From positions 141,932-205,931 of IMG/VR virus record IMGVR_UViG_3300002835_000007: DNA of 64,000 nucleotides; one strand, written 5' to 3'. Below, in pieces: positions 6,597-47,332 of the stretch. The notes under the pieces were generated by a model. It had not been told where the DNA came from and made no database searches. It saw only the letters and a list, made by a program, of their open reading frames with translations. The translations under genes were made by a program, and so were the position numbers. How positions within the stretch are numbered: position 1 is the first letter of the stretch; every line of letters starts with the position of its first letter.

Positions 6597-7322
6597 CTAT
6601 AAACCATAGTTTTTTAAAACTTCATAAAGTAGTTTATAACGTTTCATTCCAATCCTAATATCTTTAGTTGATAAATTGGTGTAATTCCTCATAGTTTCTA
6701 AGAAAGAATTCTTATTATATTTAGACCCTCCTTCCATTGAAGAGAAGACTAATTCCCAATTTTCTAAAATATCTATTAACGCATAACCAATTTTAATTTC
6801 ATTTTCATTTAATTTTTTCTTATGGTTATTTTCGCTTTCTAATTCTGTTTTAATTTCACCGACTAATTTTTTAATGAAGTCACCCATTTCAACACTATCT
6901 CTATCGATAACGTATGTCAAATCTTCCCTTTCTTCGATGCTATCGTTTAATTCTTCGTAAGATGTTGTTTGTCTAATATATTTTTCATCTTTGATTAGTA
7001 ACCCTAAAATATAGTGTTTACTAATTGTTCCAAAATATGAATAAGCTTTTTTGCCTCTACCACTTTCAAATTTGTGTACTTTTGTCATTAGGAAAGATAA
7101 AGTGTCGCTATGCAACTCTTCAAATGTCTCACCCTTTCTATACAACTTGTACTTTCTAATTATCGACTCTATCATTTTATCGAGTGGCCCTTTAAGCCAC
7201 TCGTTAAAAATTAGATTCCTTTCTGTTTCGTCTGTTGATTCTAAAAATTTGATTACTGCTTCTTCTTCTTCTGGACCAAAGTACATTTCGTTTGTTCTTT
7301 TTCGTCCTCGTTTTGTAACCAT
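6597..7322 (-). CDS. phage RNA polymerase sigma factor (T4 gp55-like)
   Basis: Region-2-like segment DTLSFLMTKVHKFESGRGKKAYSYFGTISKHYI resembles gp55 KF..AFAYFT. Confidence 0.65.
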   Translation of the reverse strand: MVTKRGRKRTNEMYFGPEEEEAVIKFLESTDETERNLIFNEWLKGPLDKMIESIIRKYKLYRKGETFEELHSDTLSFLMTKVHKFESGRGKKAYSYFGTISKHYILGLLIKDEKYIRQTTSYEELNDSIEEREDLTYVIDRDSVEMGDFIKKLVGEIKTELESENNHKKKLNENEIKIGYALIDILENWELVFSSMEGGSKYNKNSFLETMRNYTNLSTKDIRIGMKRYKLLYEVLKNYGL

Positions 7323-7325
7323 TTT

Positions 7326-8120
7326 TTAATTTTGTGAATCATACGTTATATTTCTATCTTTAGCGAAATAATATTCTTTTTTAGCAGTTGCTAACCACCA
7401 TCTTGCCTCAACTGGGTCAATAGTTTCTCTGTAAGATGCAAATAATGAGTCTTTTCTTTGGTTAATATGTTTGTATCCAAATCTAGGGATAACCATAACT
7501 CTAGCGTCTTTAAATGTCATTCTTAATAAGAATTCAGTAATGAAGGTTAATTTAATACTTGGTTTAAATCCTCCGAACTCATCATACATTGATTTTTTCA
7601 TTACAAACCCATCAACATTAAAGTTTTGGTAAGCTAATAGAGCATTGTTATCTAGGATTCCTAATTCATCAGAAAAACTTTGAGCCCATACTGCTTCGTT
7701 TGTAAAACCAATAAACTCATTATTTTCATTAACGTCAATAACGATAGGCATAAAGATATCTACGTTAGTATGTGCTTTTTGATATTCAACAACATTTTTA
7801 AACCAAATATTAGAATATTCATCATCAAGTTCTAAGATTGAGAACCATTCTGTTTTACATACTGACACACCATAATTTATTTGAGATGCGAAATCAGTTT
7901 GTCCATCATTTTCAGCAATAACAACAGAATTGCTATAATCACCAAAATCTAGAGTTTTAATATGTTTTACTACATCACTATTTTTAGGTGCTACAATTAT
8001 TAAAGTTTCTGGTCTAACATTTTGAGTTAAGACACTTTTAATTGCGTTATCTAATAAAGGTTTAGTCACTTCATTTAAAGCGTGCACTGGTAAAATTACA
8101 CTTATATTATTTTTTTCCAT
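7326..8120 (-). CDS. glycosyltransferase family 2
   Basis: ISVILPVH N-terminus; LELDDEY DxD-type motif; NFNVDG. Confidence 0.85.
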   Translation of the reverse strand: MEKNNISVILPVHALNEVTKPLLDNAIKSVLTQNVRPETLIIVAPKNSDVVKHIKTLDFGDYSNSVVIAENDGQTDFASQINYGVSVCKTEWFSILELDDEYSNIWFKNVVEYQKAHTNVDIFMPIVIDVNENNEFIGFTNEAVWAQSFSDELGILDNNALLAYQNFNVDGFVMKKSMYDEFGGFKPSIKLTFITEFLLRMTFKDARVMVIPRFGYKHINQRKDSLFASYRETIDPVEARWWLATAKKEYYFAKDRNITYDSQN

Positions 8121-8141
8121 ATTTTTTAATTTAATATTTTA

Positions 8142-9293
8142 TTATGCGTTAGTTGGTTCAACCTCGCTTAAAGATTCAGTTAATTTTTCTAAAACAATAC
8201 CTAATTCTGCTTTTCTACTTTCAAAAAGTTTAGTATAAACTTCAGATGCAGCAGCGATTTGTTTTTCACTAGTGTATTGACCTTTAGATTCAGCCATACC
8301 ATTTAATAATTCTTGTGGTAATGAATCTTCAAACCAAACTTTTAAATAGTTAGCGATTAGTTCTGGAATGTTTAAAGTTGTGTTAGTCCAAACACCATTA
8401 TTTTTAATTACTTTAACACCACTCTCATTTGTTGTTTCCATCCATTCTGGAACCATGTTAGGTATTTTACCAATTACTGGTGTGTTTGACTCAATTGCTT
8501 CCAATGGGAAAGTACCAAATCCAGATTGGTCATCAATCCAAACAGCTAAACAAGATTTAGATAATTCAGCAGCAAATTGTTTTTTAGGTAACCCTCTTAA
8601 TTCTTTAAATGTAATCCATTTGTAAAGTGGGTATTGTAAGTAGAATGATTTAGCTATTTTAGCAGCTTCACCATGGTTTCTAGTTAAAATAGAAACAACT
8701 GGGATTTTAGGTTTATCACTATCTGTAAAATAATCAGAAATAGATACTGGTACAACATGTGTTTGAATTGAAGGGAATAATGATTTAACATAATCCGCTT
8801 GTTTTTCAGATGTAGTAATTACATCGTTAAATCCGTAATCAACGTTCCATCTTTTACCAATTTGTAACAATTCTAATAAATAATCATAACTTTGTGATAT
8901 AACTATTTTTTTACATGGAAACCCTTTAAGTTGGTCCATAATGTTAGAAAAAATTTCTGGTATAACCACAAAATCAGAAGGTGATATGTTTAACTCTTGC
9001 CCTTCAATTGAAGCGTGAGGTAAAGCAGCATATTCTTCACCTAACCAATCAGCGACACCATTACCTTCTTGGTCACCTCTTAATTTATAATCATTTTTTT
9101 CATGTAACACACATGCACTGTATCCTAAATCATTTAAAATTTTAACGTGTTCGTAAATGTTAGCGATACCAGCGGTTGGGTTACCTTTTGTGTCTAGCAC
9201 AAAGAAATAAACTCTAAAGTTTTTAGTTTCAAAGTTATTTAAAGCCAAAGCTATTTGGCTTATTTGTTCTTCAATTTGTTTTTTTTGTTCCAT
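8142..9293 (-). CDS. glycosyltransferase, GT-B fold (GT4-like)
   Basis: DFVVIPE; C-terminal GFGTFPLEAIESNTPVIG (E-x7-E-like). Confidence 0.8.
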   Translation of the reverse strand: MEQKKQIEEQISQIALALNNFETKNFRVYFFVLDTKGNPTAGIANIYEHVKILNDLGYSACVLHEKNDYKLRGDQEGNGVADWLGEEYAALPHASIEGQELNISPSDFVVIPEIFSNIMDQLKGFPCKKIVISQSYDYLLELLQIGKRWNVDYGFNDVITTSEKQADYVKSLFPSIQTHVVPVSISDYFTDSDKPKIPVVSILTRNHGEAAKIAKSFYLQYPLYKWITFKELRGLPKKQFAAELSKSCLAVWIDDQSGFGTFPLEAIESNTPVIGKIPNMVPEWMETTNESGVKVIKNNGVWTNTTLNIPELIANYLKVWFEDSLPQELLNGMAESKGQYTSEKQIAAASEVYTKLFESRKAELGIVLEKLTESLSEVEPTNA

Positions 9294-10325: not shown

Positions 10326-11219
10326 TTATTTTTTTGTAAAAAATGATAAAACTTTACCAAAAATACTTTTTTCTTTAATAATCTGAGATTTTGGTGACTC
10401 TGGTTTTACTATTTGTGTTTGTCTGGATTTTTCATCTAACAGTCTTTTTTTTCTATTGTCATATAACTTGATGAAATAAGAAGTCAACCTATGTCTAACA
10501 ACTTCATCAGCATTAAATTCAACGACACCAACACCTTCTTCTGGATTGTTTTTAACGTCTTCAATTAACGCTTCTAACGCACTATCGCTTTCATCTTTTA
10601 AATCTATTTGTCCAGTATCACCCAAAGCAACTACTTTAGTATTTTCAGAAAAACGTGTTAAGAATGTTTTAGAGTTTTTATGTCTAACGTTTTGGTATTC
10701 ATCAATGATAATAATACAGTTAGAAAAAGACCTACCACGAATAGAACCAAACACTTCCATTTTGATGTACCCAGCTTCCATTAATTTGTTAGTAAGTTCT
10801 TCACCAATCAATTTATAAAAAGCATCAAAGTAAGACATCATAATGAATTTAAGTTTGTCTTTTTCATCACCAGGCAGCGTACCCAAATCTTCACCTTTTA
10901 ATTGTTCAACAGACTTAACTAATTTAATTTCACGATAAATTTCTGGATTGTTTTTAAGTAACAATAATGCTTCGGCAACACTTAAAAGTGTTTTACCAGT
11001 GCCAGCTGGACCAGTACAAAAAGTCACGTCATTGGTCTTAATTGAATTGGTTAACTTCTTTTGCGTCTCATTTTTGTGTTTTATATCAATTTTAATTTGA
11101 GATAATAAAACCGTTGGTCCTTTGGTAAAACTTTCGTCTTCTGTTGTAATTTTTTTAGCTCTAGTGCTAGTAGTTCTAGTAGTTCTAGTAGTTTTTGTTG
11201 CAATAGGTTTTTTGTTCAT
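10326..11219 (-). CDS. phoH: PhoH-family ATPase
   Basis: GPAGTGKT, IRGRSF, IIIDEYQN, GDTGQID. Confidence 0.93.
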   Translation of the reverse strand: MNKKPIATKTTRTTRTTSTRAKKITTEDESFTKGPTVLLSQIKIDIKHKNETQKKLTNSIKTNDVTFCTGPAGTGKTLLSVAEALLLLKNNPEIYREIKLVKSVEQLKGEDLGTLPGDEKDKLKFIMMSYFDAFYKLIGEELTNKLMEAGYIKMEVFGSIRGRSFSNCIIIIDEYQNVRHKNSKTFLTRFSENTKVVALGDTGQIDLKDESDSALEALIEDVKNNPEEGVGVVEFNADEVVRHRLTSYFIKLYDNRKKRLLDEKSRQTQIVKPESPKSQIIKEKSIFGKVLSFFTKK

Positions 11220-11726: not shown

Positions 11727-12367
11727 ATTAAATTCTTTTCTGAAAATGATTCTAAAATAAGCGGCATTGATGTTTGGCTCAAATGCATATGTGAACCTTC
11801 CCAATTATCCAAATATTCTGGTTTAGTTATTTTATTTTCACCTATCATTTTATAAAATATTGTTACAAATTCAATACCATTTTGGTTACACAATTCTTCT
11901 AAGTATCTGTTAAATTCTTCAGTAACTAAGTTTCTTTCTAAACAAGTACCAAATGAAGGTCCGCCAGTATATTGTTTTGACTCATGCCATGACGCAATTG
12001 GACCCCATGCGATAACTTTAAGACCAGCTTCTTTATATCTTAATAAAACACTAAAATATCTATCAACGCATTCTTTAACTATTTCATTAACAGTTTTAGT
12101 TTGCGATTCCATTTGTTTAATTAAATGAGCTCTAATATCAACTTCACCAAAACAAAATAAAACATAATCATTATCAATATTAACATTATAATTAATTATT
12201 TCATCAATTACTGGCATTTTATTTTCAAGTTGGTAAGCGGTTGCTGGCCCAATTCTGTAACTTTTAAAAAATGGAGTTATGTCATCAGACCTTTGTGGCC
12301 ATATTGGTTGCATTTCTTCTTTACCACTGAAAACAGCAGAGTGACTATCACCTATACAATGTATCAT
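11723..12367 (-). CDS. SGNH/GDSL hydrolase or O-acyltransferase family protein
   Basis: IGDSHS block I; GEVD; D-x-x-x-x-H-L-S C-terminal block. Confidence 0.75.
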   Translation of the reverse strand: MIHCIGDSHSAVFSGKEEMQPIWPQRSDDITPFFKSYRIGPATAYQLENKMPVIDEIINYNVNIDNDYVLFCFGEVDIRAHLIKQMESQTKTVNEIVKECVDRYFSVLLRYKEAGLKVIAWGPIASWHESKQYTGGPSFGTCLERNLVTEEFNRYLEELCNQNGIEFVTIFYKMIGENKITKPEYLDNWEGSHMHLSQTSMPLILESFSEKNLI

Positions 12368-13331
12368 AATTCATAATGTTTTTACTTAAATTGTTATAAA
12401 AATTAATTTCATCTTGTTCACCATTTTCACCACCAATAGCCCATGGGTTTTGATTAGCATAAACAGTATTAAACATAGGGTGAATACCAAATCCATTTTT
12501 AACAAATAAAAACTTTTTATTGTTATCCCTTTTGTATTTATTTAACGCTATTTCATCGTATGCGTCCACTGTTGGTTGTGATAATATATTAACCCATTCA
12601 GATGTTTTTATAAAAAACATACTATTAGTGAAATATGGTGAATGGATTTCAAATAATTCATAATTATTATCGGAAGTGAATTTATCAATATTTTTTAAAA
12701 TATAGTTATTAATTTCCATCTGAGCTTCATATGAAATCCTAAGTGGGTGAATACCTTTTGTAATAGTGTTTAATGAATTTAAACCTTCGTAAAACTTATT
12801 ATAATCCCATTCAGTAGCGTTTATTGTAAACTGATTCAAAGGTGTGTAGTCTACATTCCATAAACCATTTGGCATTGGTCTGTTTAAAAAATGTTTATAA
12901 ACAATATCTCTAACTGATAAATCATCAATAAAATCATTAATAAAAAAATCACATGATGGAATATTATTAGACATAGTTGGTGATAAAGTTAATACTTCAT
13001 CATTGTTTAACATATCAACATTTTCAATTAGGTAATCCCAAACATAATTGTTAATAAAACAATCTTCATCTAATTTAACTGAATATTCAGTATCAGTTGA
13101 AATAGCAATTCTTATTTTATTTAAGTAATTATGATGTCCGTTAATTACATGTATTGTATATTCAATACCTAAACTATCACATTTATTAACCCAATCATTG
13201 TCATGGGTTGCTAAAACATTTAATTTTAATTTTAGTTTATTTTCTGGTTTTATTTTAGATAAAAAATAGAACATTAAATTTGAGTAATCTAATCTATTGT
13301 GTGATAAATAATTTATAGTTATTGTTTTCAT
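12348..13331 (-). CDS. putative glycosyltransferase (GT-A-like)
   Basis: YSVKLDEDCFI DxD motif; glycan-island context. Confidence 0.6.
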   Translation of the reverse strand: MKTITINYLSHNRLDYSNLMFYFLSKIKPENKLKLKLNVLATHDNDWVNKCDSLGIEYTIHVINGHHNYLNKIRIAISTDTEYSVKLDEDCFINNYVWDYLIENVDMLNNDEVLTLSPTMSNNIPSCDFFINDFIDDLSVRDIVYKHFLNRPMPNGLWNVDYTPLNQFTINATEWDYNKFYEGLNSLNTITKGIHPLRISYEAQMEINNYILKNIDKFTSDNNYELFEIHSPYFTNSMFFIKTSEWVNILSQPTVDAYDEIALNKYKRDNNKKFLFVKNGFGIHPMFNTVYANQNPWAIGGENGEQDEINFYNNLSKNIMNYDTLYR

Positions 13332-14119
13332 TTCATATAATTTTGTCTAATGAATTGTTTTAATTCACAATTTTTATGGTAATTAACTCTTTTAACAGAG
13401 AAATAACCTTGATTGAATTTTTCAACAATTTGATTTATTGTAATTACCCAATTATAATTAGGTTTATTTGATGGGTCGTAAGTACCAAAGTAAGGTGGAA
13501 ACTCCCATTGTTGTCCGCTAAGTAAAATCATATAAGGTAGAAAAATATTTATCATATCATCATTAGGGTAATATTCTAAACATTTGTCTAAATGCTGCTT
13601 AGCCAATAACATAACTTCTTTTGTTACTGTCATACATTCCCAATTAGCACTCATAGGTAATTCTATATTATATTCAAGATATAAATTTTTAGGGTCCCAA
13701 CGACCATATGGTTGCTGTAATGGAAACCCTACAATAGTTTTGTCTGAGTCTTTTCCGTTATATGATGAAACCCAATCTTCAGTATTTAAAAATTGTGCAT
13801 AATTAACACCTTTTTCAAAGTTAATTCCATTTATAAAGTATTGGTTAGCTGAAACTAAACAGAAGTGTTCAAAACTATTTATTTCATCTTCACTTATATT
13901 TCTAATTAAATCAATCAACGCACCAAAAATAAAGTTAGAATGATTTAAAGGACCAAGCATATGACGCATTCTAATTTTAGGGTGGTCTAATGTTGGGTGA
14001 TTAATCATGAAATCACAATTATCATGGAAATAAGATATGTTATCTATCATATCATCAACATCTTCAATCGTGTGTGTTGTTGAGTGAGCAAATATTATAA
14101 ACGCTGTTTTAGATTTCAT
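13328..14119 (-). CDS. putative glycosyltransferase (core-2/GT14-like)
   Basis: AFIIFAH N-terminus; FEHFCLVSANQYFI; WEC. Confidence 0.5.
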   Translation of the reverse strand: MKSKTAFIIFAHSTTHTIEDVDDMIDNISYFHDNCDFMINHPTLDHPKIRMRHMLGPLNHSNFIFGALIDLIRNISEDEINSFEHFCLVSANQYFINGINFEKGVNYAQFLNTEDWVSSYNGKDSDKTIVGFPLQQPYGRWDPKNLYLEYNIELPMSANWECMTVTKEVMLLAKQHLDKCLEYYPNDDMINIFLPYMILLSGQQWEFPPYFGTYDPSNKPNYNWVITINQIVEKFNQGYFSVKRVNYHKNCELKQFIRQNYMK

Positions 14120-15107
14120 TTATAGTTTTAATTAATTCATCAATTCTGTTGTATATTGCTTGTTGCACTTCAGAATCTAAATTGTTATAATTCAATTTAT
14201 TTTTAAGTTCAATAAATCTAGGTTCAGAGAAAACATAATGACCACTTATGTTTATGATTTCTTCTTTGTTATCTTCTGGTATAAAATCAGAGTCAACCCA
14301 TTTTACCCATCTTTTTGATTCATAACAAATCTCATAAAATTCATCTAGTAATTCTATATGATTAGTTTTAATTATGTTTAAAATAATTTTTGTTTCTATT
14401 TGTCCAAATTCTGGGGCAATATTGATACAGTTTAACCCATTATTAAATTTCGATTTAACTAATTCATTTGTTAGGTAATCACCATTATGTTCTTTTGAAA
14501 TCATGCCATGATTTTTGGCAACTTTAACCATTTCAATTAATCTATCTTGATTGAAACTACCAATATTTGTGTTACCTTTTAATGCTGTTCCAGATTGGAT
14601 TACAGCGTATTTAATTTGACCATATATGTCTAATGGTAGTAATTCTTTTAAGTCTTCTAAAAGATTGTTTAATTCTACTTCATTTGTTGGTCTGATTGCT
14701 TCTTCAGTTCCAACCTCAAATAACATGTTTGGATTTAATCTATAACCTTTTAAAATAAATTCAACTGTGGCTAATAACCCATCACGGTATTCTTTATGTT
14801 TTTTCCAAACATCAACATGTATAATGTCGAAATATTTGCAATCTTCAATAAAAGAATCCATACCGTCATCTTCACTATATCCTTGTGATGGACCAGAATG
14901 GTCTCTTACTAATAAGATTTTATTAGATTTGCTTCTTACGTATTCGCAGAAGTCTTTAGTTGTCCAATTGTTAACATAACCACCATTAAACTCTACTTGT
15001 CTTCTAGATGGTATTAATCCAATTTCAACGTTATTTTCATTTGAGTAATTAATAATTGCGTCAACAATATTTTTACTCATCGGTCCTATAAATATTTTTG
15101 GTTTCAT
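14109..15107 (-). CDS. GatZ/KbaZ-like TIM-barrel (tagatose-6-P epimerase/aldolase-like)
   Basis: SRRQV, RDHSGP (cf. GGDHLGP), IHVD, FEVGTEE, KEHNGDY, INIAPEFG. Confidence 0.7.
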   Translation of the reverse strand: MKPKIFIGPMSKNIVDAIINYSNENNVEIGLIPSRRQVEFNGGYVNNWTTKDFCEYVRSKSNKILLVRDHSGPSQGYSEDDGMDSFIEDCKYFDIIHVDVWKKHKEYRDGLLATVEFILKGYRLNPNMLFEVGTEEAIRPTNEVELNNLLEDLKELLPLDIYGQIKYAVIQSGTALKGNTNIGSFNQDRLIEMVKVAKNHGMISKEHNGDYLTNELVKSKFNNGLNCINIAPEFGQIETKIILNIIKTNHIELLDEFYEICYESKRWVKWVDSDFIPEDNKEEIINISGHYVFSEPRFIELKNKLNYNNLDSEVQQAIYNRIDELIKTINEI

Positions 15108-15119
15108 ACACCAAATATA

Positions 15120-16670
15120 TTATTTATAAAACACTTTGTAAAGATTAAAGCGACCAAAATAATATAAAAACTCACCCATCTTGTAATCATGTAATGGCGA
15201 CATGTTTAACCATATGATTGCTGTCAGTGTTTGAACCTTTTTTAAATCTAACCCATTGTCAAAAATCCACTTATGTAACTTTTCTCTACAATTAGTTAAA
15301 ATATCACTTCTTAAAATATCGCATTTAATACCGTTTGATGATTTTTTAACTGAGAATAATTCTTGATGGACAATATCGTGATTGAATAATAAATTGTGAT
15401 TTAATTTAGCTAAATCATAATAGATGTCACCATTTTTTAAATCACCTCCAAAGTCTTGTCTCCAATCTAATAACACAAATTCACGATTACCTTTATAAAT
15501 AATATTATCTAAAATGTAATCACCATGAAATTGATAATAAGTGTCTGAACATAACCAGTTTTCATTTATTTCTTTTATCATATCAATAACTGGTGGTACT
15601 ACCATACCATTGATGGTAATCTCTTCATCACTTATTTTATTATCATTAAATAATTTTTGTAATCGTTCATAAGTTTTATCAAAATAAAACTTTTTAGTTA
15701 TTTCTTTAAAGTCTTCAGACTGACCATGTTTAACCCATAGGTTGTTTTTACTCCAATCTAAAAAATCTTCAAAAATAATTTCATTTACTGACGTTGCTAA
15801 TAAATCACCAGCAGCATATTCGTATTTGTAAAAATTATCTTTACTGTCAATCAATTTAGGTGTTAACCCAGATAGTTGTTTACATCGTTCAACTCTGTTA
15901 GCACAAACTGTTTTATTATAGAAAAATTTAATAACGAAATCATTAAATAAAAAGATTGATTCATCTACTTTATCTAACAATTCAAATTTGTCGTATATAA
16001 CTTCTCTAGCGTGTTTTAATTCAAATACATTACCTATGTCTAACCAATTGAAATATTCTTTTGTTTCCCATTTAATATTCATTCGATTGATTGCGTGACA
16101 ATCGCTTAATGTTGTATCGCTAGTATCTGCTTCATATTCCTCTTGTAATGAATCCCAAAACAATTTATAATCTTTTATACCAGCAAGTCCAATATAAGCA
16201 AATTTAGAGGTTAAATCTCCTTTGTCATTTATCATTCTATTAGGAATAAAAGATAAAGTTCTATATTGTGAATTGTTTTCTTTGAATTGACAAGCCAACC
16301 AGTTTTCTGTTGGTTCTTTAATTTCTTCAGTTATTATAGTATCTGCTGCATGAAATATAAATGGACATTGTAATTCATTTTTAGCTTTTAACATTGAGTA
16401 ACCAAGAGATGAACCTTCACCTTCATATTTATCAACTTCGATAAATGTAATTTTTCTTTCTGGATAAGCTAGTGTTAAAAAATCTTTAACTTGTTCTCCA
16501 AAATAACCAACAGTTACAACTAATTCAACTTCTTTAGGGTATGCTTCTACGATATATGATATCGCTGGTTTTTTACCAACTCTAACTAAACATTTATTAG
16601 TGTATTTAGTTAAATCACCTAATCTAGAACCAACACCACTAGTGGTTATTAAAACTTTATACTCGACCAT
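15120..16670 (-). CDS. nucleotidyltransferase fused to kinase-like (APH/choline-kinase) domain
   Basis: SGVGSRLG..TNKCL, HAADT, WLDIG; C-terminal HGDYILDNI, DWR, YDLAKL. Confidence 0.85.
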   Translation of the reverse strand: MVEYKVLITTSGVGSRLGDLTKYTNKCLVRVGKKPAISYIVEAYPKEVELVVTVGYFGEQVKDFLTLAYPERKITFIEVDKYEGEGSSLGYSMLKAKNELQCPFIFHAADTIITEEIKEPTENWLACQFKENNSQYRTLSFIPNRMINDKGDLTSKFAYIGLAGIKDYKLFWDSLQEEYEADTSDTTLSDCHAINRMNIKWETKEYFNWLDIGNVFELKHAREVIYDKFELLDKVDESIFLFNDFVIKFFYNKTVCANRVERCKQLSGLTPKLIDSKDNFYKYEYAAGDLLATSVNEIIFEDFLDWSKNNLWVKHGQSEDFKEITKKFYFDKTYERLQKLFNDNKISDEEITINGMVVPPVIDMIKEINENWLCSDTYYQFHGDYILDNIIYKGNREFVLLDWRQDFGGDLKNGDIYYDLAKLNHNLLFNHDIVHQELFSVKKSSNGIKCDILRSDILTNCREKLHKWIFDNGLDLKKVQTLTAIIWLNMSPLHDYKMGEFLYYFGRFNLYKVFYK

Positions 16671-17010
16671 ATTTATCTTCTATTCTAATAACGTCATCTA
16701 GAAAATTTGTAGAACTTTCTAAATACAAACTGTCAACGATTGCCGACATTCTATGAACTACAAATGGTTCAATTGTGTAATACTCACCTTCATTTAAAAT
16801 CATTTCAGTTAAGGTGTCTTTGTCTGGGCCAATTTCAAATTTAATTTGACCTTTTAAAACATAAAAAGATTCATGTTTTTTTTCATGGTACTGTAAGCTG
16901 CAACTATTTCCAGCTGTCATGAATAATTCTTTAACTACGTAATTTTCATTAACTTCAATCCATTTTTCCCATCCCCATGGTTTATCAACTTTTGTAACTT
17001 CTTTTTTCAT
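16657..17010 (-). CDS. cupin (mannose-6-P-isomerase C-terminal-like)
   Basis: KPWG, SLQYHEKKHESFYVLKG, HRM. Confidence 0.85.
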   Translation of the reverse strand: MKKEVTKVDKPWGWEKWIEVNENYVVKELFMTAGNSCSLQYHEKKHESFYVLKGQIKFEIGPDKDTLTEMILNEGEYYTIEPFVVHRMSAIVDSLYLESSTNFLDDVIRIEDKYGRV

Positions 17011-17011
17011 A

Positions 17012-17371
17012 TTATAAATCTTTTATTGAATTAATACCTTCATTTCTTTTAAGGTTTATGGCTATTGCTGTGTCATATTCTTTGTCTTTTTTTCTATCAT
17101 TGACAACGACTCTAATTCCACCTCCTAGACCCATTATCAATTGGTCATAAAAGATACCTAACTCAGCTAATTGTTTAACGGTTATATCTCTAACACCTTC
17201 ACGTCTTCCAGTTGTTAAAATAATGTTATAACCTTTTCTATCCCATTCGGATAACTTTTCTAAAGTACCATCTAAAAGTCTAGGTGTTTTAGTAAATTGC
17301 TCTGCAATGTTTTCGGAATGCTCAATGAGTGTTCCGTCAATGTCTAAAAAAATTGTTTTTGGTCTATTCAT
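17012..17371 (-). CDS. HAD phosphatase (capsule-biosynthesis phosphatase-like)
   Basis: IFLDIDGTL, TTGR, YDQLIMG, ND. Confidence 0.85.
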   Translation of the reverse strand: MNRPKTIFLDIDGTLIEHSENIAEQFTKTPRLLDGTLEKLSEWDRKGYNIILTTGRREGVRDITVKQLAELGIFYDQLIMGLGGGIRVVVNDRKKDKEYDTAIAINLKRNEGINSIKDL

Positions 17372-17387
17372 AATTTTATTTTTTTAA

Positions 17388-18080
17388 TTATAATCTGTTT
17401 TTGTCAACATGTGAAGCATAAAATTTTTCTACTGGAAATTGCCAATCTGTTTTGTGTGGTGGTAACCCAGATTTTCCACTAGGGCTTTCGTTAAAAAGTA
17501 CATCACCAAATAAAGAGCATTGTGTTAAATCATAGCCTTGTTCTTCAAAAAAGAAACCATAACAACCTTCACAATAACCAGTTTCTGCTTTATTATTTGG
17601 TAAAAATTTATTAGCCCCCATTTCTAGCATTCTTTTCATTACTTTATTTTTACAGAAAAAAATAGGACCATAACAACCGCTACCTTCATTAAGATAATTA
17701 TACTCAGATTCTAATGTTATTCTTTCACCCCATGTATTAAAATTACCTAACACTCTGTCAAAATTCATTAAAGTTACTAAATCACGTTCTTTAAGATAAT
17801 CTAAATTAGCTTTAACTCTCATTGAATCATGCAAGAAGAAATAAAATTCTTCATTAGGGTATTTGTTGTAAGCATGCCAATAAGCACCTACCATCCAATT
17901 ATTATTATTTACGTCTTCAATTATAACATCATATTCTTTTAATATTTCAAAATATGATTTATCGTTTGAATCACTATCAACAACAACTATCTTTTCAGTT
18001 GGATGATAGGTTCTAATATCTTTAACTAATTGAATAATAAAAGGAAAATTTGGATTATATTTGCATGGTATAACAAACAT
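17388..18080 (-). CDS. putative glycosyltransferase (GT-A-like)
   Basis: FVIPC, VVVDSDS, FFLHDSM, ER-like ETG..EG. Confidence 0.6.
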   Translation of the reverse strand: MFVIPCKYNPNFPFIIQLVKDIRTYHPTEKIVVVDSDSNDKSYFEILKEYDVIIEDVNNNNWMVGAYWHAYNKYPNEEFYFFLHDSMRVKANLDYLKERDLVTLMNFDRVLGNFNTWGERITLESEYNYLNEGSGCYGPIFFCKNKVMKRMLEMGANKFLPNNKAETGYCEGCYGFFFEEQGYDLTQCSLFGDVLFNESPSGKSGLPPHKTDWQFPVEKFYASHVDKNRL

Positions 18081-21303: not shown

Positions 21304-22677
21304 TTAAGATGTAAAGTTTTCTAAATAAGTTTTTAAATCTTCTGGAGTTCCTAAACCCCACATTTTATTAATATTATATGGTTTAAATTTAAACCCATCT
21401 AAAATTGCTTCATTGTAAACTGGTGCAACATAAAATTCATTATTAACTCTAACATTTTTTTCAATCATTTGTTCAGCGTATTTAACATAATCTGAACCTT
21501 TATTCCAATAATAAATCCCAACCGTTGCAATGTCGCTTATAGGTTTCTTTTCGGCAATCTCAGTGATGAAACCATTTTCATCTAATTTAGCAAAAGACCA
21601 TTTAGGGTGTGTCGCTTTAAACGTTAACATACCACCATCTAAGTTGTCATTTGTCATTGAATAATAAAAGCTATTGCTATCCCATTCAACAAATTGGTCA
21701 GAATTAGCGATTAATAAATGTTTATCGTTATTAATAAATTCTTTAGCTAATAACGTTGTGCATGCAGCACCTTCAGTTACACCATCAACTTGTACTATTT
21801 CACAATTAGGTGTAATCAAATTTAACAAATATTTTAAGTTGTATTTTTCGTAATGTTCTTTTTGAACAATATAAATAAAATTAGCTTTAATATTAAGGTT
21901 TTCCACAACTACTTGAATCATTGGTTTGTGGTCAACTTCAATCAATGGTTTAGGGAATGTATAACCAGCAGAACTAAATCTAGAACCAGCACCAGCCATA
22001 GGTATTAAGATGTTGAAATCATCAGACTCCCATTTATTATTGATTTTAGAGACTTCTGTAACGTTTTTAACCAAATTTGATATCTTACTATATGTGACAT
22101 CATTTGGTGTTTCTACAGCACATAAAAAGGCCCCAGAATCAATTGCTGCTTGTCTTCCATGGAAACTATCTTCAACAACTATTGTTTCATTTGGTTTAAC
22201 ACCAGCGTGAACCATAGCTTTTAAATAAATCTCTGGGTGTGGTTTTGAAGTTTTAACATCTTCATTACCAAAATAATGGTCTACATATTCAATAAGACCA
22301 GTTTTATATAACATCAATTTAATTGATTCTCGTATTGAATTTGAAGCAACGTATACTTTGTACCCATCTGTTTTAAGTTTTCTTAAAACATTTTTTAATT
22401 CCATTGATTCAGTCAACGTTTCTTTAATCACGTCAGATGTCATTTTTTGTTTCATTTCCCAAACATACTTATGTTGAGATTCTGGTAGACCTTTTTCCTT
22501 TGTTAATAAATCTAACTTAACGTTAGTTGGTAGTCCATCGTATTTATTCAAATGTTCATCTCTAGTGATGATAAATTTTTTGTCAACTAATTCAATAGCT
22601 TTATTTAAAGATTCATAGTGTATTTCTTTTGCGTCAACTAAAACACCATCTAAATCAAATATAATTAATTTAACCAT
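21304..22677 (-). CDS. HAD phosphatase fused to nucleotidyltransferase (BcbE/GT2_BcE-like C-terminal domain)
   Basis: FDLDGVL, KPHPEIY, EDS; ILIPMAGAGSRF..PKPLI, GAACT, NSDQ, EFYVAP, GLGTPEDL. Confidence 0.88.
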   Translation of the reverse strand: MVKLIIFDLDGVLVDAKEIHYESLNKAIELVDKKFIITRDEHLNKYDGLPTNVKLDLLTKEKGLPESQHKYVWEMKQKMTSDVIKETLTESMELKNVLRKLKTDGYKVYVASNSIRESIKLMLYKTGLIEYVDHYFGNEDVKTSKPHPEIYLKAMVHAGVKPNETIVVEDSFHGRQAAIDSGAFLCAVETPNDVTYSKISNLVKNVTEVSKINNKWESDDFNILIPMAGAGSRFSSAGYTFPKPLIEVDHKPMIQVVVENLNIKANFIYIVQKEHYEKYNLKYLLNLITPNCEIVQVDGVTEGAACTTLLAKEFINNDKHLLIANSDQFVEWDSNSFYYSMTNDNLDGGMLTFKATHPKWSFAKLDENGFITEIAEKKPISDIATVGIYYWNKGSDYVKYAEQMIEKNVRVNNEFYVAPVYNEAILDGFKFKPYNINKMWGLGTPEDLKTYLENFTS

Positions 22678-34277: not shown

Positions 34278-34769
34278 TTAAATGTTTTTTGTTTTTGAAG
34301 GGTTATTCTTTTTGTCTTCTAAAGCTTTTAACAATTGTTCTATTTGTTCTTCAGATAATTCTAAATCAGAAATTTTATCCATAACTTTTTCAACATCTGG
34401 GTTATAGTTTTTAGGTTTTACATCTGAATCTTTACCTTTTTTTACTAAGTCTTCAATTAATTCTTCAATATTTTCTTTTGTTAAAATGTTTTTTTTATTT
34501 TCAGATAAACCATAATTAAGTGTAATACCACCAGTTCTAATACCACCAAAGCTGTAAACAGCAAACCATGGAATATTTTGTCTATATCTACCAAAAACTA
34601 CATCAGTAAATGTTGAAATACCCTTTTCGTAAGTAGAATCGTCATTATAAGGTTTTTCAATAGGTCCAGTTTGTATTTCTCTATTGCCTATGATGTTTAT
34701 ATCACTTCCGCTGCTAGTGAAATCACCACCTACTAATTCATCTAATTGTTTTTTAGTTATTCTTTTCAT
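34278..34769 (-). CDS. hypothetical protein, possible internal head protein
   Basis: 163 aa; first gene after a late motif; LDE, LSE motifs. Confidence 0.65.
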   Translation of the reverse strand: MKRITKKQLDELVGGDFTSSGSDINIIGNREIQTGPIEKPYNDDSTYEKGISTFTDVVFGRYRQNIPWFAVYSFGGIRTGGITLNYGLSENKKNILTKENIEELIEDLVKKGKDSDVKPKNYNPDVEKVMDKISDLELSEEQIEQLLKALEDKKNNPSKTKNI

Positions 34770-34784
34770 AAAAAATCTTTATTT

Positions 34785-34815
34785 ATAAATATATTCATTT
34801 CTTTTAATATTTATA
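34785..34815. promoter_or_regulatory. back-to-back late promoters
   Basis: ATATTTAT on minus (34785-34792) and ATATTTATA on plus (34807-34815) between divergent genes. Confidence 0.65.
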
Positions 34816-34829
34816 ATAAAAAGAATAAA

Positions 34830-41560: not shown

Positions 41561-41624
41561 TTAATTAATAATTGAATATGCTATACAAAGTAAAATTTTA
41601 TCATATTTATTAAAAAACGTAAAA

Positions 41625-42941: not shown

Positions 42942-42977
42942 ACAATAAGTTTAAATATTTATATAAAAACTAATAAA

Positions 42978-46939: not shown

Positions 46940-46956
46940 AAAAGATATTTATAATT

Positions 46957-47331
46957 ATGGAATTCTATATTAATAAAAACGCAACATTACCAAAATTAAA
47001 ACTTGAACTAATCAAGGATGGTAGAAATGATTTTAACAAATTTCACGATAAAATCCAAAATGCTAATATAACATTTACTATGTCTGATGTTGTTACTGGT
47101 GTTAAACGTGTTGCATGTAGTAATGCGTCTATTGAACAAGTTTTACCTAAAGGTGACTGTAATTGTGATGAGTTTTATTTAGTTTATCAATTTACATCAA
47201 AACAAACGTCTATTGGTGGTAGATACATTGGTCAATTTGAAATTGAATTTTTAGATGGTAGTGGAACGCTTATTGTTCCTATCAGAGAAGAACTATTTAT
47301 AAATGTTTTAGAGGGGTCAATTAAAAAATAA
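46957..47331 (+). CDS. BppU-like Ig-fold baseplate/structural protein
   Basis: FYINKNATLP.L..EL, ITFTM, YQF..T...G.Y.GQFEI.F.DG. Confidence 0.6.
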   Translation: MEFYINKNATLPKLKLELIKDGRNDFNKFHDKIQNANITFTMSDVVTGVKRVACSNASIEQVLPKGDCNCDEFYLVYQFTSKQTSIGGRYIGQFEIEFLDGSGTLIVPIREELFINVLEGSIKK

Positions 47332-47332
47332 C

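What the first reader, a model, noticed from the sequence alone, without database searches (positions are those of the whole stretch)
14109..17371. Four-gene module suggesting synthesis of a nucleotide-activated ketohexose
Seen as contiguous co-oriented genes: HAD phosphatase, cupin, nucleotidyltransferase-kinase fusion (516 aa) and GatZ/KbaZ-like TIM barrel. From recall, an NTP-transferase/kinase protein plus a small HAD (BcbE/BcbF, KfoE-like) occurs in loci for fructose-branched capsules (Pasteurella B/E, E. coli K4). GatZ-family proteins act on fructose-6-P/tagatose-6-P. Inference: ketose-6-P is epimerised, phosphorylated, dephosphorylated and nucleotidylated to give NDP-fructose/tagatose or a related rare ketose. 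A GatZ-like enzyme in a phage glycan pathway is unfamiliar to me.
Basis: partly seen in the sequence, partly recalled or inferred. Interest (0 to 1): 0.72.

Follow-up and report, generated by a model that had tools for sequence, protein, structure and literature searches.

The report
Phage four-gene nucleotide-sugar synthesis cassette
A large marine phage carries a tightly packed four-gene unit, conserved in well over a hundred other phages and in many uncultured bacteria, that most likely reshapes a common sugar phosphate and activates it into a still unidentified, possibly rare, nucleotide sugar for the neighbouring glycosyltransferases.

Summary
Four co-oriented, near-contiguous minus-strand genes at 14109-17371 encode a small HAD phosphatase, a PMI-type cupin, a 516-aa nucleotidyltransferase/APH-kinase fusion and a 332-aa GatZ-like barrel.

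They form a real functional unit. The 80 best of 177 IMG/VR relatives of the fusion carry the GatZ-like gene in 79 cases and the cupin in 77. All four parts also occur fused to each other elsewhere.

The kinase/phosphatase/transferase half is a distant relative of the phage AfhE/AfhF system (RB69, HY126). That system turns arabinose-5-P into UDP-arabinofuranose by anomeric phosphorylation, removal of the distal phosphate, then nucleotidylation. The new feature is the front end: a GatZ-type enzyme with its metal and catalytic residues intact, plus a PMI-like isomerase, in place of a SIS isomerase.

The best reading is ketose-6-P, then a C4-remodelled ketose-P, then probably an aldose-P, then the bisphosphate, the sugar-1-P and the NDP-sugar. 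The product is unresolved. Because an aldose-ketose isomerase is always present, I favour an aldohexose of the talo/galacto series.

The LicA/LicC choline alternative is not supported. I class this as a new variant of a recently characterised kind.

The parts
17012..17371 (-). Small cap-less HAD phosphatase (119 aa); proposed to remove the distal (C6-type) phosphate from the sugar bisphosphate
   Evidence: Pfam Acid_phosphat_B 5.7e-8, HAD_PNKP and Hydrolase_3. NCBIfam Cof-type 3.8e-7, HAD-IIIA 3.5e-6, GmhB 0.011, and no TIGR01689 hit. It is 37% identical to the S-SRM01 gp302 HAD (4.7e-12). Motifs DIDGT, TGR and ND..K are conserved in 50 relatives.
16657..17010 (-). PMI-type cupin (117 aa); proposed ketose-P / aldose-P isomerase
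   Evidence: PF01050 MannoseP_isomer 1.8e-8, above the curated cut-off. TIGR01479 GMP_PMI C-terminal region 8.7e-10. phrog_7851 8.7e-25. PWG, S38, Q40, H42, E47 and H86 are at least 90% conserved in 85 relatives.
15987..16670 (-). N-terminal nucleotidyltransferase domain of the 516-aa fusion (about aa 1-228); proposed sugar-1-P + NTP -> NDP-sugar
   Evidence: NCBIfam archaeal GlmU-type NTase 4.2e-11, and AglF, RmlA and MurU models. PDB LicC 1.7e-7. VIA-align Z 24.5 to RmlA 4ecm, 23.9 to LicC and 20.8 to MurU. Foldseek results.
15120..15986 (-). C-terminal APH-fold kinase domain of the fusion (about aa 229-516); proposed anomeric kinase acting on a sugar phosphate
   Evidence: APH hit across the catalytic loop in 20/21 relatives. 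Z 15.1 to APH(4)-Ia. Invariant H382-G-D384...N389 and D402. It is 33% identical to the S-SRM01 gp301 kinase part (7e-11) and 29% over 203 aa to the Brevibacillus APH-like protein (1.4e-14). Both of those match the RB69 gp52 kinase (1.7e-25 and 2.9e-12). hhalign to RB69 gp52 gives 8.5e-5.
14109..15107 (-). GatZ-like class II aldolase-fold TIM barrel (332 aa); proposed metal-dependent C4 epimerase (retro-aldol/aldol) of a ketose phosphate
   Evidence: Foldseek top hits are 3txv and 2fiq. The family profile hits KbaY-type 8q57 at 3e-5 and 3txv at 7e-4. 12 of 25 relatives hit PF08013. hhalign to E. coli GatZ aligns D69-H70, E135 and H207 with D87-H88, E171 and H257, and all are invariant.
13328..14119 (-). 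263-aa protein overlapping the GatZ-like gene by 11 nt; possible GT-A type glycosyltransferase (lead only)
   Evidence: No Pfam hit. Atlas feature neighbours include the Branch/DUF3405/STELLO glycosyltransferase families. It is found with the module in 15/80 viral loci and in L087.
12348..13331 (-). 327-aa protein, 4-nt overlap with the previous gene; possible GT2/GT7-like glycosyltransferase (lead only)
   Evidence: No Pfam hit. Atlas feature neighbours are the Glycos_transf_2 and Glyco_transf_7C families. It is found with the module in 23/80 viral loci and in L006 and L087.

Best explanation
The four genes form a self-contained route from a central-metabolism ketose phosphate to a nucleotide-activated sugar, which the glycosyltransferases of the surrounding island (about 11.7-28.2 kb) then use.

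Back end (homology supported, chemistry by analogy). The fusion's C-terminal APH-fold kinase phosphorylates the anomeric hydroxyl of a sugar that already carries a distal phosphate. The small HAD removes the distal phosphate. The fusion's N-terminal domain then couples the sugar-1-phosphate to an NTP. This kinase/phosphatase pair replaces a phosphomutase, as in the phage AfhE/AfhF route to UDP-arabinofuranose and in NDP-heptose synthesis.

Front end (inferred). The GatZ-like enzyme keeps the Asp-His, Glu and His metal/catalytic set of the GatZ/KbaZ fructose-6-P/tagatose-6-P 4-epimerases. I propose that it inverts C4 of a ketose-6-phosphate, most simply fructose-6-P to tagatose-6-P, or otherwise remakes the C3-C4 bond. 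The PMI-like cupin then converts the ketose phosphate to the matching aldose phosphate.

Most likely product class: an NDP-aldohexose of the talo/galacto series, for example NDP-D-talose if PMI stereochemistry is kept. The nucleotide is unknown.

My confidence in the cassette logic is about 0.75. My confidence in an aldose rather than a ketose product is about 0.5-0.55. My confidence in the specific talo/galacto hexose is about 0.3.
For: A functional unit:
- Tight or overlapping junctions.
- Co-occurrence with the fusion in 79/80 (GatZ-like), 77/80 (cupin) and at least 52/80 (HAD) viral loci, with the order cupin-fusion-GatZ-like almost fixed.
- The same trio in Legionellales, Flavobacteriaceae, Saccharibacteria, Gribaldobacteria, cyanobacteria, Bdellovibrionota, Planctomycetota, Verrucomicrobiota and an archaeon.
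- Fusion proteins that join the parts in several combinations.
- Where the 119-aa HAD is missing, a 178-aa KdsC-like phosphatase is present in 15/23 loci. KdsC-type enzymes remove distal phosphates.

Back end:
- The architecture is identical to AfhE (NTase N-domain, APH-like kinase C-domain) plus AfhF (small HAD). Their activities are reported in PMC13326640, citing He et al. 2026.
- Chains of homology link the window proteins to RB69 gp51/52/53 through S-SRM01, S-SKS1 and Brevibacillus.
- Catalytic motifs are intact.
- Cultured cyanophages carry the same back end with other front ends: S-SRM01 uses a SIS isomerase, and S-SKS1 uses a transaldolase.

Front end:
- GatZ fold and conserved D69-H70, E135 and H207.
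- E. coli GatZ/KbaZ are F6P/T6P 4-epimerases whose Zn site was predicted by modelling (PMC11907403).
- No GatY/KbaY-type aldolase partner in the record.
- The cupin passes the PF01050 cut-off and keeps the PWG and Q/H/E/H residues.

Context:
- GT2, GT4, GT10 and GT25 enzymes, O-methyltransferases and a second NTase in the same co-oriented block.
Against: No enzyme of this module has been assayed, and substrate, product and nucleotide are all inferred.

The GatZ-like protein is only 14-16% identical to solved GatZ proteins and is about 90 aa shorter. It replaces two GatZ signature residues (E44 to I32, K279 to N229) and has its own invariant R35-R36. Its substrate may therefore not be fructose-6-P.

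A close homologue (48-54%) stands alone beside sdhAB in a clade of small marine Flavobacteriaceae genomes in which the fusion was not found. The enzyme can therefore work outside this pathway.

Similarity to AfhE is remote: direct BLASTP to the RB69 kinase gives only E 0.006. The module HAD does not match TIGR01689.

The Pasteurella bcbE/F/G genetics links a related set of genes to a ketose (fructose) side chain. Some bacterial versions add a shikimate-dehydrogenase-like gene inside the module, which hints at redox steps not modelled here.
Confidence: 0.6

Rival explanations
1. One reading: the product is a nucleotide-activated ketohexose such as NDP-tagatofuranose or NDP-fructofuranose. The kinase phosphorylates the anomeric O2 of a ketofuranose-6-phosphate, giving a 2,6-bisphosphate. 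The HAD removes the 6-phosphate and the transferase makes the NDP-ketose. The cupin has a side role or acts on another branch.
For: GatZ-type enzymes act on ketose-6-phosphates. D-fructofuranose-6-P is D-arabinofuranose-5-P with an extra hydroxymethyl group on the anomeric carbon (established sugar stereochemistry), so an AfhE-like kinase could plausibly accept it. [quoted passage not shown] BcbF names TIGR01689, the family that RB69 gp51 and the S-SKS1 HAD hit. BcbE-like proteins belong to the nucleotide-diphospho-sugar transferase superfamily (PMC11641403). The KdsC-like phosphatases in the bacterial versions act on ketose-type sugar acids.
Against: A PMI-type aldose-ketose isomerase accompanies the fusion in 77/80 viral loci and in the bacterial loci, and a ketose product from fructose-6-P does not need one. 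The only biochemically defined relative makes an aldose nucleotide. No BcbE/F/G sequence was compared here and no NDP-fructose has been demonstrated in the papers I read. The module HAD is not a TIGR01689 member.
Confidence: 0.22
2. The GatZ-like protein works as a true aldolase or aldol-transfer enzyme rather than a C4 epimerase. It would build or cut a ketose phosphate of another chain length (pentulose, heptulose or octulose), so the final NDP-sugar is not a hexose.
For: The fold is shared with the class II FBP/TBP/sulfofructose-P/YdjI aldolases, and epimerisation itself goes through C3-C4 cleavage. In phage S-SKS1 the equivalent slot next to the kinase/HAD/NTase set is held by a transaldolase, another enzyme acting on the C3-C4 bond. 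The substrate-lining residues differ from GatZ. The enterobacterial distant relatives sit next to a transaldolase in a PTS operon.
Against: It lacks the second histidine metal ligand of true class II aldolases (GTAHG becomes GTALKG) and shares the GatZ-type H-x-x-D-Y motif. GatZ/KbaZ gave epimerase but FbaA/GatY/KbaY gave no tagatose in vivo. No second substrate-supplying enzyme is conserved in the module.
Confidence: 0.13
3. The NDP-sugar is made for hypermodification of the phage's own DNA, as in RB69, DLP3 and HY126 (arabinosyl-5-hydroxycytosine), rather than for a surface or virion glycan. This is a rival about use, not about chemistry.
For: The characterised AfhE/AfhF relatives serve DNA glycosylation. 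The record encodes a thymidylate-synthase-family protein (PF00303, 2.4e-86, genome 124683-125933).
Against: That PF00303 gene scores like a canonical ThyA and lies about 30 kb from the module (genome 124.7-125.9 kb against about 156-159 kb). tblastn with the RB69 5hodCMP synthase found nothing. The module sits in a block of GT2/GT4/GT10/GT25 enzymes, sugar O-methyltransferases and a GDSL-like protein typical of polysaccharide loci. In bacteria the same module lies beside Wzm/Wzt exporters. The record is only about 58% complete, so absence of a gene is weak evidence.
Confidence: 0.1
4. The fusion is a LicC/LicA-like enzyme that activates phosphocholine or another amino-alcohol phosphate, and the neighbours are unrelated.
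For: The best PDB sequence hit of the fusion is LicC (1.7e-7). JGI names many homologues 'choline kinase'. The APH fold includes the choline kinases.
Against: By structure LicC is no better a match than RmlA, GlmU, GalU or MurU. Only the generic APH model hits the kinase domain, and no choline-kinase model does. The fusion is physically fused in other organisms to the GatZ-like and cupin sugar-phosphate enzymes and is homologous to sugar-phosphate kinases of the AfhE type. No lic-type transporter or transferase was seen among the neighbours scanned.
Confidence: 0.03

Closest known systems
AfhE/AfhF UDP-arabinofuranose route of phages HY126, RB69 (gp55, gp52:53, gp51) and DLP3 (PMC13326640; He et al. 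2026 as cited there)
   Same: A bifunctional protein with an N-terminal RmlA/MurU/LicC-like nucleotidyltransferase and a C-terminal APH-like kinase, beside a roughly 120-aa HAD phosphatase and a ketose-P/aldose-P isomerase. It is phage-encoded. The step order is anomeric kinase, distal phosphatase, then transferase. Homology is traceable through intermediates.
   Different: Sequence similarity is remote. The isomerase here is a PMI-type cupin, not a SIS arabinose-5-P isomerase, and no SIS domain was found in the record. An extra GatZ-like enzyme is present. The module HAD is outside TIGR01689. The context is a glycosyltransferase island rather than a 5-hydroxycytosine DNA-modification cluster.
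GatZ/KbaZ family (PF08013, TIGR02810): fructose-6-P/tagatose-6-P 4-epimerases, PDB 2fiq and 3txv
   Same: These are the best structural matches. The Asp-His, Glu and His metal/catalytic residues and the H-x-x-D-Y motif are conserved. The second His ligand of true class II aldolases is absent.
   Different: Identity is 14-16%. The protein is 332 aa against about 420 aa and gets no Pfam hit on its own. Signature residues E44 and K279 are replaced by I32 and N229, and R35-R36 are invariant. The context is anabolic (glycan) rather than galactitol/GalNAc catabolism.
NDP-heptose pathway (GmhA, HldE or HddA, GmhB, HldC or HddC)
   Same: The same four-step logic (established knowledge): ketose-P isomerase, anomeric kinase, HAD-IIIA phosphatase for the distal phosphate, then nucleotidyltransferase. 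The module HAD gives weak GmhB hits.
   Different: All catalysts come from different families (cupin vs SIS, APH vs PfkB/GHMP). A separate, conventional heptose set lies next to the module in the relative L001, so the module is not a heptose pathway there.
Type II PMI-GMP enzymes (AlgA/ManC/XanB; TIGR01479)
   Same: The cupin matches their C-terminal mannose-6-P isomerase domain above Pfam's cut-off, and a nucleotidyltransferase is encoded beside it.
   Different: Here the cupin is a free-standing 117-aa protein, and the step between isomerase and transferase is done by a kinase plus a phosphatase, not a phosphomannomutase.
Pasteurella multocida BcbE/BcbF/BcbG (type B capsule fructose side chain) and other bacterial kinase/HAD/NTase sets
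   Same: Small HAD (TIGR01689 is named after EcbF/BcbF) next to a nucleotide-diphospho-sugar transferase-superfamily protein. Genetics links them to the addition of a ketohexose. The same set is seen as separate genes in Brevibacillus and Caballeronia.
   Different: The Bcb proteins were not compared by sequence here. The module HAD fails the TIGR01689 model. Neither the Pasteurella paper nor the Brevibacillus and Caballeronia loci show a GatZ-like or cupin partner.
MupP/AmgK/MurU MurNAc recycling (established knowledge; MurU structures 4y7t/4y7u)
   Same: A HAD phosphatase, an APH-family anomeric sugar kinase and a MurU-type uridylyltransferase give an NDP-sugar without a mutase. MurU is among the top structural matches.
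   Different: There the order is phosphatase first, on a 6-phosphate, then kinase on the free sugar. The proteins are separate and the function is salvage.

Membership tests
GatZ/KbaZ family (PF08013 / TIGR02810) | Class II aldolase-type TIM barrel closest to solved GatZ-family structures | tested here: met
   Foldseek top hits are 3txv (2.5e-13) and 2fiq (9e-13) at TMq 0.75, ahead of all FBP/TBP aldolases; model pLDDT 91.6.
GatZ/KbaZ family (PF08013 / TIGR02810) | Match to the family HMM above its curated cut-off | tested here: not met
   No Pfam hit for the window protein. NCBIfam KbaZ scores 16 bits against a cut-off of 707. Only 12 of 25 relatives give weak PF08013 hits, the best 1.9e-6.
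GatZ/KbaZ family (PF08013 / TIGR02810) | Catalytic Asp and metal ligands His, Glu, His (E. coli GatZ D87, H88, E171, H257; predicted by modelling in PMC11907403) | tested here: met
   hhalign to E. coli GatZ aligns D69-H70, E135 and H207. All are invariant in 25 relatives.
GatZ/KbaZ family (PF08013 / TIGR02810) | Family signature residues that separate GatZ from aldolases (E44, K279; C20 not alignable) | tested here: not met
   These align to I32 and N229, both invariant in this family.
GatZ/KbaZ family (PF08013 / TIGR02810) | Fructose-6-P/tagatose-6-P 4-epimerase activity | not testable with these tools
   Needs an enzyme assay.
AfhE-type bifunctional sugar-phosphate kinase / NDP-sugar pyrophosphorylase | N-terminal RmlA/MurU/LicC-like nucleotidyltransferase fused to a C-terminal APH-fold kinase | tested here: met
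   AF2 model with pLDDT 92. Z 24.5/23.9/20.8 to RmlA/LicC/MurU for residues 1-247, and Z 15.1 to APH(4)-Ia for the remainder. H-G-D...N and D motifs are invariant.
AfhE-type bifunctional sugar-phosphate kinase / NDP-sugar pyrophosphorylase | Sequence homology to RB69 gp52:53 | tested here: inconclusive
   Direct comparison gives BLASTP E 0.006 (kinase) and hhalign 8.5e-5 (kinase) and 5.6e-3 (NTase). Transitive links are strong: window to S-SRM01 7e-11, S-SRM01 to RB69 1.7e-25, window to Brevibacillus 1.4e-14, Brevibacillus to RB69 2.9e-12.
AfhE-type bifunctional sugar-phosphate kinase / NDP-sugar pyrophosphorylase | Adjacent small HAD phosphatase and a ketose-P/aldose-P isomerase | tested here: met
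   HAD and cupin lie directly upstream. The isomerase belongs to a different fold family (cupin, not SIS).
AfhE-type bifunctional sugar-phosphate kinase / NDP-sugar pyrophosphorylase | Arabinose-5-P 1-kinase and UDP-arabinose pyrophosphorylase activities | not testable with these tools
   Needs an enzyme assay; given the different front end, arabinose is not expected here.
AfhF / TIGR01689 (EcbF-BcbF capsule biosynthesis phosphatase) | Match to the TIGR01689 HMM | tested here: not met
   No hit at E<=1 for the module HAD. RB69 gp51 (3.8e-13), the S-SKS1 HAD (1e-26) and this phage's second HAD (5.5e-8) do hit, though all below the 162-bit cut-off.
AfhF / TIGR01689 (EcbF-BcbF capsule biosynthesis phosphatase) | HAD catalytic motifs in a cap-less protein of about 120 aa | tested here: met
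   D10-x-D12-G-T14, T54-G-R56, N91-D92 and K94 are conserved in 50 relatives. It is 30% identical to the phage's TIGR01689-like HAD (1e-9).
Type II PMI cupin domain (PF01050) | HMM match above the curated cut-off, plus the PWG motif and the Q/H...E...H residues taken here to be the metal ligands | tested here: met
   35 bits against a cut-off of 23.6. P11-W12-G13, Q40, H42, E47 and H86 are at least 90% conserved in 85 relatives.
Type II PMI cupin domain (PF01050) | Mannose-6-P/fructose-6-P isomerase activity | not testable with these tools
   Needs an enzyme assay; the real substrate pair may differ.
LicC/LicA phosphocholine activation | Specific similarity to LicC and to choline kinase, plus a lic-type gene context | tested here: not met
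   The LicC match is no better than the matches to sugar-1-P transferases. Only the generic APH model hits the kinase domain. The neighbours are sugar-phosphate enzymes and glycosyltransferases.

The most novel reading that the evidence does not exclude
The cassette makes a nucleotide sugar with no described biosynthetic route, such as NDP-D-talose or NDP-D-tagatofuranose, straight from fructose-6-phosphate. It would use the first GatZ-type C4 epimerase known to be recruited to glycan anabolism. This route would be widespread in uncultured marine phages, candidate-phyla bacteria and predatory bacteria, and so would mark a common but unrecognised rare-sugar decoration. A search of the held papers for GDP-/UDP-talose and UDP-/CDP-/GDP-tagatose found only two passing mentions of GDP-D-talose, in papers on unrelated subjects, which I did not open.
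Probability: 0.4. Interest if true: 0.75.

Novelty: new variant of a known kind. Interest (0 to 1): 0.62.

Why it matters
The kinase/phosphatase/transferase way of activating a phosphosugar without a mutase was shown biochemically in phages only in 2025-2026, for UDP-arabinofuranose used in DNA modification.

This module shows the same back end coupled to a different, two-enzyme front end, and placed in a glycan island. Cultured cyanophages show two further front ends. Together these point to a modular toolkit in which swapping the upstream enzyme changes the sugar.

The GatZ-like/cupin version is very common in environmental viruses (177 IMG/VR contigs) and occurs in many uncultured bacterial phyla, yet no member has been studied.

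Identifying its product would:
- name a sugar that phages install during infection;
- give a function to thousands of proteins now labelled 'hypothetical' or 'choline kinase';
- extend the known role of GatZ-type epimerases from catabolism to biosynthesis;
- perhaps provide a short enzymatic route to a rare nucleotide sugar.

Tried and rejected
- **Kinase-domain substrate class.** Foldseek and AFDB searches of the whole fusion returned only nucleotidyltransferase matches. A kinase-only profile against PDB sequences found nothing meaningful.
- **Literature.** Searches for GatZ plus nucleotidyltransferase, for kfoE/kfoD and for NDP-talose/tagatose gave nothing that describes this module. The primary AfhE/AfhF paper is not in the library.
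- **Is the stand-alone GatZ-like gene of marine Flavobacteriaceae a replacement aldolase?** Rejected: those genomes have a canonical class II FBA. The locus is syntenic in one clade beside sdhAB and says little about the substrate.
- **Is GatZ-like a chaperone subunit for a GatY/KbaY aldolase?** Rejected: no PF01116 protein in the record (record 58% complete), and no such family emerged as a conserved neighbour when the ORFs of 23 module-bearing loci were clustered.
- **T4-like core genes and 5hodCMP synthase.** tblastn with RB69 proteins found only a second HAD.
- **Promoter and terminator scan.** Counts were at chance level.
- **Reaching a Pasteurella bcb locus.** Sampling 401 Gammaproteobacteria for TIGR01689 gave two unnamed hits and no usable context. 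BcbE/F/G and E. coli K4 Kfo proteins were therefore never compared by sequence.

Full report
**Where the window lies.** The window is the last 64 kb of a 205,931-bp single-contig virus record. IMG/VR classes it as linear and CheckV puts it at 58% complete. GC content is about 29%. Almost every gene from about 0.3 to 34.8 kb is on the minus strand.

**The observation.** The ORF listing reproduces the reported genes and coordinates exactly, all on the minus strand:
- HAD, 17371..17012 (119 aa)
- cupin, 17010..16657 (117 aa)
- fusion, 16670..15120 (516 aa)
- GatZ-like, 15107..14109 (332 aa)

The junctions are a 1-nt gap, a 14-nt overlap and a 12-nt gap. The next gene overlaps the GatZ-like gene by 11 nt.

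**HAD.** It hits Acid_phosphat_B (5.7e-8), HAD_PNKP and HAD-IIIA models. It carries the DxDGT, T-G-R and N-D..K motifs, which are conserved in 50 relatives.

**Cupin.** It passes Pfam's cut-off for the C-terminal mannose-6-phosphate isomerase domain (35 bits against 23.6). It keeps PWG, Q40, H42, E47 and H86 across 85 relatives.

**Fusion.** Its HMM hits are weak (APH 1e-3, NTP_transf_3 4e-3; archaeal GlmU-type NTase 4e-11). The AF2 model is confident (pLDDT 92). The N-terminal 230 residues superpose on RmlA, LicC, GlmU, GalU and MurU with Z 21-24.5. The remainder superposes on APH(4)-Ia with Z 15.1. The kinase catalytic-loop motifs are invariant.

**GatZ-like protein.** It has no Pfam hit of its own. 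Its model (pLDDT 91.6) matches the GatZ-family structures 3txv and 2fiq best (2.5e-13 and 9e-13, TMq 0.75). Class II FBP/TBP aldolases follow. A family profile hits KbaY-type and GatZ-type PDB chains, and 12 of 25 relatives touch PF08013.

**One unit, not four neighbours.**
- IMG/VR holds 177 contigs that encode a relative of the fusion. In the 80 best, tblastn finds the GatZ-like gene in 79, the cupin in 77 and the small HAD in 52. The order cupin-fusion-GatZ-like is almost fixed, and the HAD sits at either end.
- The same set appears at 50-60% identity in a 598-kb phage-like contig that carries gp32, and in a 309-kb contig.
- At 30-50% identity it appears in Legionellales, a Flavobacteriaceae MAG, Saccharibacteria, Gribaldobacteria (beside Wzm/Wzt), Peregrinibacteria, Yanofskybacteria, a cyanobacterium, Bdellovibrionota, Planctomycetota, Verrucomicrobiota and an archaeon.
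- I clustered the neighbours across 23 such loci. Where the 119-aa HAD is absent, a 178-aa HAD is present in 15 loci. It is KdsC-like (1.3e-19), a family that removes distal phosphates from sugar acids.
- A search of 1.8 billion representative proteins found natural fusions: GatZ-like+fusion (854 aa), fusion+GatZ-like (897 aa, with Pfam NTP_transf_3+APH+GatZ_KbaZ), GatZ-like...cupin+fusion (1390 aa) and GatZ-like+HAD (448 aa).

**The back end has a characterised relative.** A 2026 NAR paper (PMC13326640) summarises work on phages HY126, RB69 and DLP3. A SIS isomerase makes arabinose-5-P. The bifunctional AfhE has an N-terminal MurU/LicC-like transferase and a C-terminal APH-like kinase. AfhE phosphorylates arabinose-5-P to the 1,5-bisphosphate. 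The small Mg-dependent HAD AfhF removes the 5-phosphate. AfhE then forms UDP-arabinofuranose.

I fetched the RB69 genes.
- Direct similarity to the window proteins is remote: kinase BLASTP 0.006, hhalign 8.5e-5; HAD none.
- Intermediates connect them firmly. The window fusion matches S-SRM01 gp301 (7e-11 and 4e-6), and gp301 matches RB69 gp52 (1.7e-25) and gp53 (4.5e-7).
- The window kinase matches a Brevibacillus APH-like protein (1.4e-14), which matches RB69 gp52 (2.9e-12).
- The window HAD matches the S-SRM01 HAD (4.7e-12) and the phage's own second HAD (1e-9). That second HAD matches RB69 gp51 (3.7e-10).

Cultured cyanophages show the same back end with other front ends:
- S-SRM01 has two SDR epimerases, a SIS protein, the fusion, a HAD and then glycosyltransferases.
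- S-SKS1 has a transferase, a kinase, a HAD and a transaldolase.

Brevibacillus and Caballeronia carry kinase/HAD/transferase sets in glycan or natural-product loci. This is a general phosphosugar-to-NDP-sugar device with exchangeable upstream enzymes.

**The front end.** E. coli GatZ and KbaZ were long annotated as aldolase chaperones. They are in fact fructose-6-P/tagatose-6-P C4 epimerases. Their modelled Zn site is H88, H257 and E171, with D87 as the base. They differ from true aldolases at E44, K279 and C20 (PMC11907403).

A profile alignment of this family to E. coli GatZ gives the following:
- D69-H70, E135 and H207 sit on the catalytic and metal positions, and H97/D99 on H122/D124. All are invariant.
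- Like GatZ, the family lacks the second histidine of true aldolases and has the H-x-x-D-Y motif.
- E44 and K279 are replaced by invariant I32 and N229, and R35-R36 are invariant.

I conclude that the chemistry is the same, metal-dependent cleavage and re-formation of the C3-C4 bond of a 2-ketose, in a distinct subfamily whose substrate may differ. No GatY/KbaY-type partner is encoded in the record.

**Proposed mechanism.** A ketose-6-phosphate, most simply fructose-6-P, is epimerised at C4 by the GatZ-like enzyme. The cupin isomerises it to the aldose-6-phosphate. The kinase domain phosphorylates it at C1. The HAD removes the distal phosphate, and the transferase domain nucleotidylates the sugar-1-phosphate.
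- Shown: the folds, the conserved catalytic residues, the genetic linkage, and homology of the back end to AfhE/AfhF-type proteins.
- Inferred: every substrate, the order of the front-end steps, and the nucleotide.

If PMI stereochemistry is retained, the product would be NDP-D-talose. NDP-D-galactose (pyranose or furanose) is the other simple outcome.

**The ketose alternative deserves weight.** Pasteurella multocida type B capsule bears a fructose side chain. bcbE and bcbG mutants lose it, and bcbF is predicted to take part (PMC13552107). BcbF gives its name to TIGR01689, which RB69 gp51, the S-SKS1 HAD and this phage's second HAD hit. BcbE-like proteins belong to the nucleotide-diphospho-sugar transferase superfamily. 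Fructofuranose-6-P is arabinofuranose-5-P with a hydroxymethyl group on the anomeric carbon, so activation of a ketofuranose by such enzymes is chemically reasonable.

Against this reading for the present module:
- Its own HAD does not match TIGR01689.
- A PMI-type isomerase is almost always present.
- I could not obtain the Bcb sequences to compare.

I put the ketose reading at about 0.2 and the aldose reading at about 0.5. The rest goes to other chain lengths or aldolase-type roles.

**The choline rival.** The LicA/LicC reading rests only on generic transferase similarity and automatic names. The fusions to sugar-phosphate enzymes and the sugar-kinase relatives contradict it.

**Context and use.** The co-oriented block from about 11.7 to 28.2 kb holds, in coordinate order:
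- a GDSL-like protein;
- two probable GT-A glycosyltransferases that overlap the module (Atlas leads only);
- the module itself;
- a weak GT2-like protein;
- two Methyltransf_24 proteins;
- DUF6492;
- a 457-aa HAD_2+NTP_transferase fusion;
- GT10 and GT25 enzymes;
- a GT2_5+GT4 protein.

The close relative L087 is syntenic. A role in a surface or virion glycan is therefore more likely than DNA hypermodification. The record has a canonical-looking ThyA about 30 kb away, and no homologue of the RB69 5hodCMP synthase was found. The record is incomplete, so this is not proof.

**Caveats.**
- A 48-54% identical GatZ-like gene stands alone beside sdhAB in one clade of 1.8-2.1-Mb marine Flavobacteriaceae genomes. 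Those genomes have a normal FBA and a separate cupin PMI, and the fusion was not found with this query. The enzyme can serve another pathway.
- Enterobacteria have a 417-aa distant relative in a fructose-type PTS/transaldolase operon.
- Some relatives of the GatZ-like protein carry a C-terminal SnoaL_2 domain.
- Seven bacterial modules include a shikimate-dehydrogenase-like gene.
- Some fusions join the GatZ-like domain to an aminotransferase, a GFO/IDH/MocA oxidoreductase or a methyltransferase. The pathway has tailoring variants that this model does not explain.

**Verdict.** This is a new variant of a recently characterised kind of sugar-activation cassette. It is widespread and unstudied, and its product is unknown and possibly a rare sugar nucleotide. 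Interest 0.62.

Noticed in passing
window 21304-22677 (-): A 457-aa fusion of a beta-phosphoglucomutase-like HAD_2 domain (6.5e-32) and an NTP_transferase domain (1e-11). Its transferase part is 28-31% identical to the transferases of the S-SKS1, Brevibacillus and Caballeronia kinase/HAD/NTase sets. It looks like a second, different mutase-plus-transferase route to an NDP-sugar in the same island.
   Followed up: partly
own genome G000:C1:45659-46024 (L091 9660-10025), outside the window: A second small HAD (121 aa). Unlike the module HAD, it hits TIGR01689 EcbF-BcbF (5.5e-8) and is 31% identical to RB69 gp51. It lies beside an RNase R-like RNB protein (661 aa) and a DPBB protein, not beside sugar genes.
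   Followed up: partly
loci L008-L027, L050, L063 (marine Flavobacteriaceae SAGs/MAGs), match at about 8001-8975: A stand-alone 325-aa GatZ-like gene, 48-54% identical to the phage protein. It sits at a fixed chromosomal position next to sdhB/sdhA in about 16 genomes of one clade. It diverges faster (66-98%) than sdhAB (91-100%). The fusion was not found in four of these genomes. Its function there is unknown.
   Followed up: partly
L081 7935-9188 (Klebsiella sp.) and similar loci L058, L064, L068, L082, L083, L085: A 417-aa divergent GatZ relative (27-30% identical to the window protein; TIGR02810 only 1e-10). In L081 it lies in an operon with a multiphosphoryl PTS protein, fructose-type IIB and IIC components and a transaldolase. 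This is probably a catabolic ketose-phosphate epimerase for an unidentified PTS sugar.
   Followed up: no
L087 10001-11311 and about 40 of the 120 best homologues (P0137-P0231): Many close relatives of the GatZ-like protein are about 436 aa long and carry a C-terminal SnoaL_2 (NTF2-like) domain. In the window this domain is cleanly absent. L087 also has an SDR epimerase and a 313-aa gene that the window lacks.
   Followed up: partly
L023 7393-8010, L037 11805-12656 and five other bacterial loci: A shikimate-dehydrogenase-like gene (Shikimate_dh_N, 2e-12 to 6e-11) sits inside or right after the module in 7 of 23 loci. This suggests an extra redox step on the sugar phosphate in those variants.
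   Followed up: no
proteins P0246, P0247, P0250, P0264 (representative library): GatZ-like domains fused to a class I/II aminotransferase, a GFO/IDH/MocA oxidoreductase or a methyltransferase. I did not check whether these are real fusions or gene-calling artefacts.
   Followed up: no
RB69 p051 (L088 7709-8095), S-SKS1 SWZG_00040 (L090 7527-7883), phrog_1238: These small HAD phosphatases are annotated 'phosphoheptose isomerase' in RefSeq and PHROGs, and phrog_7851 labels the cupin family 'cysteine dioxygenase'. Both labels look like misannotations that hide this kind of cassette.
   Followed up: partly
window 17387-17415 (-): The best sigma-70-like match of the 18-kb scan (TTCACA-17-TATAAT, 11/12) lies just upstream of the HAD start codon. 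The total number of such matches is at chance level, and this consensus may not apply to the unknown host.
   Followed up: no
window 10326-11219 (-), 6597-7322 (-), and 34746-51311 (+): A PhoH-like gene (1.3e-52) just downstream of the island, and a protein with a weak Sigma70_r2 hit. From 34.7 kb the strand switches, with very large ORFs (1639, 631, 438, 1038 and 1288 aa) that I did not examine; they are presumably virion or other large phage proteins.
   Followed up: no
own genome G000:C1:124683-125933: A 428-aa ORF with a strong thymidylate synthase match (PF00303, 2.4e-86), longer than a plain ThyA. I did not examine it for an extra domain or for hydroxymethylase-type changes.
   Followed up: no
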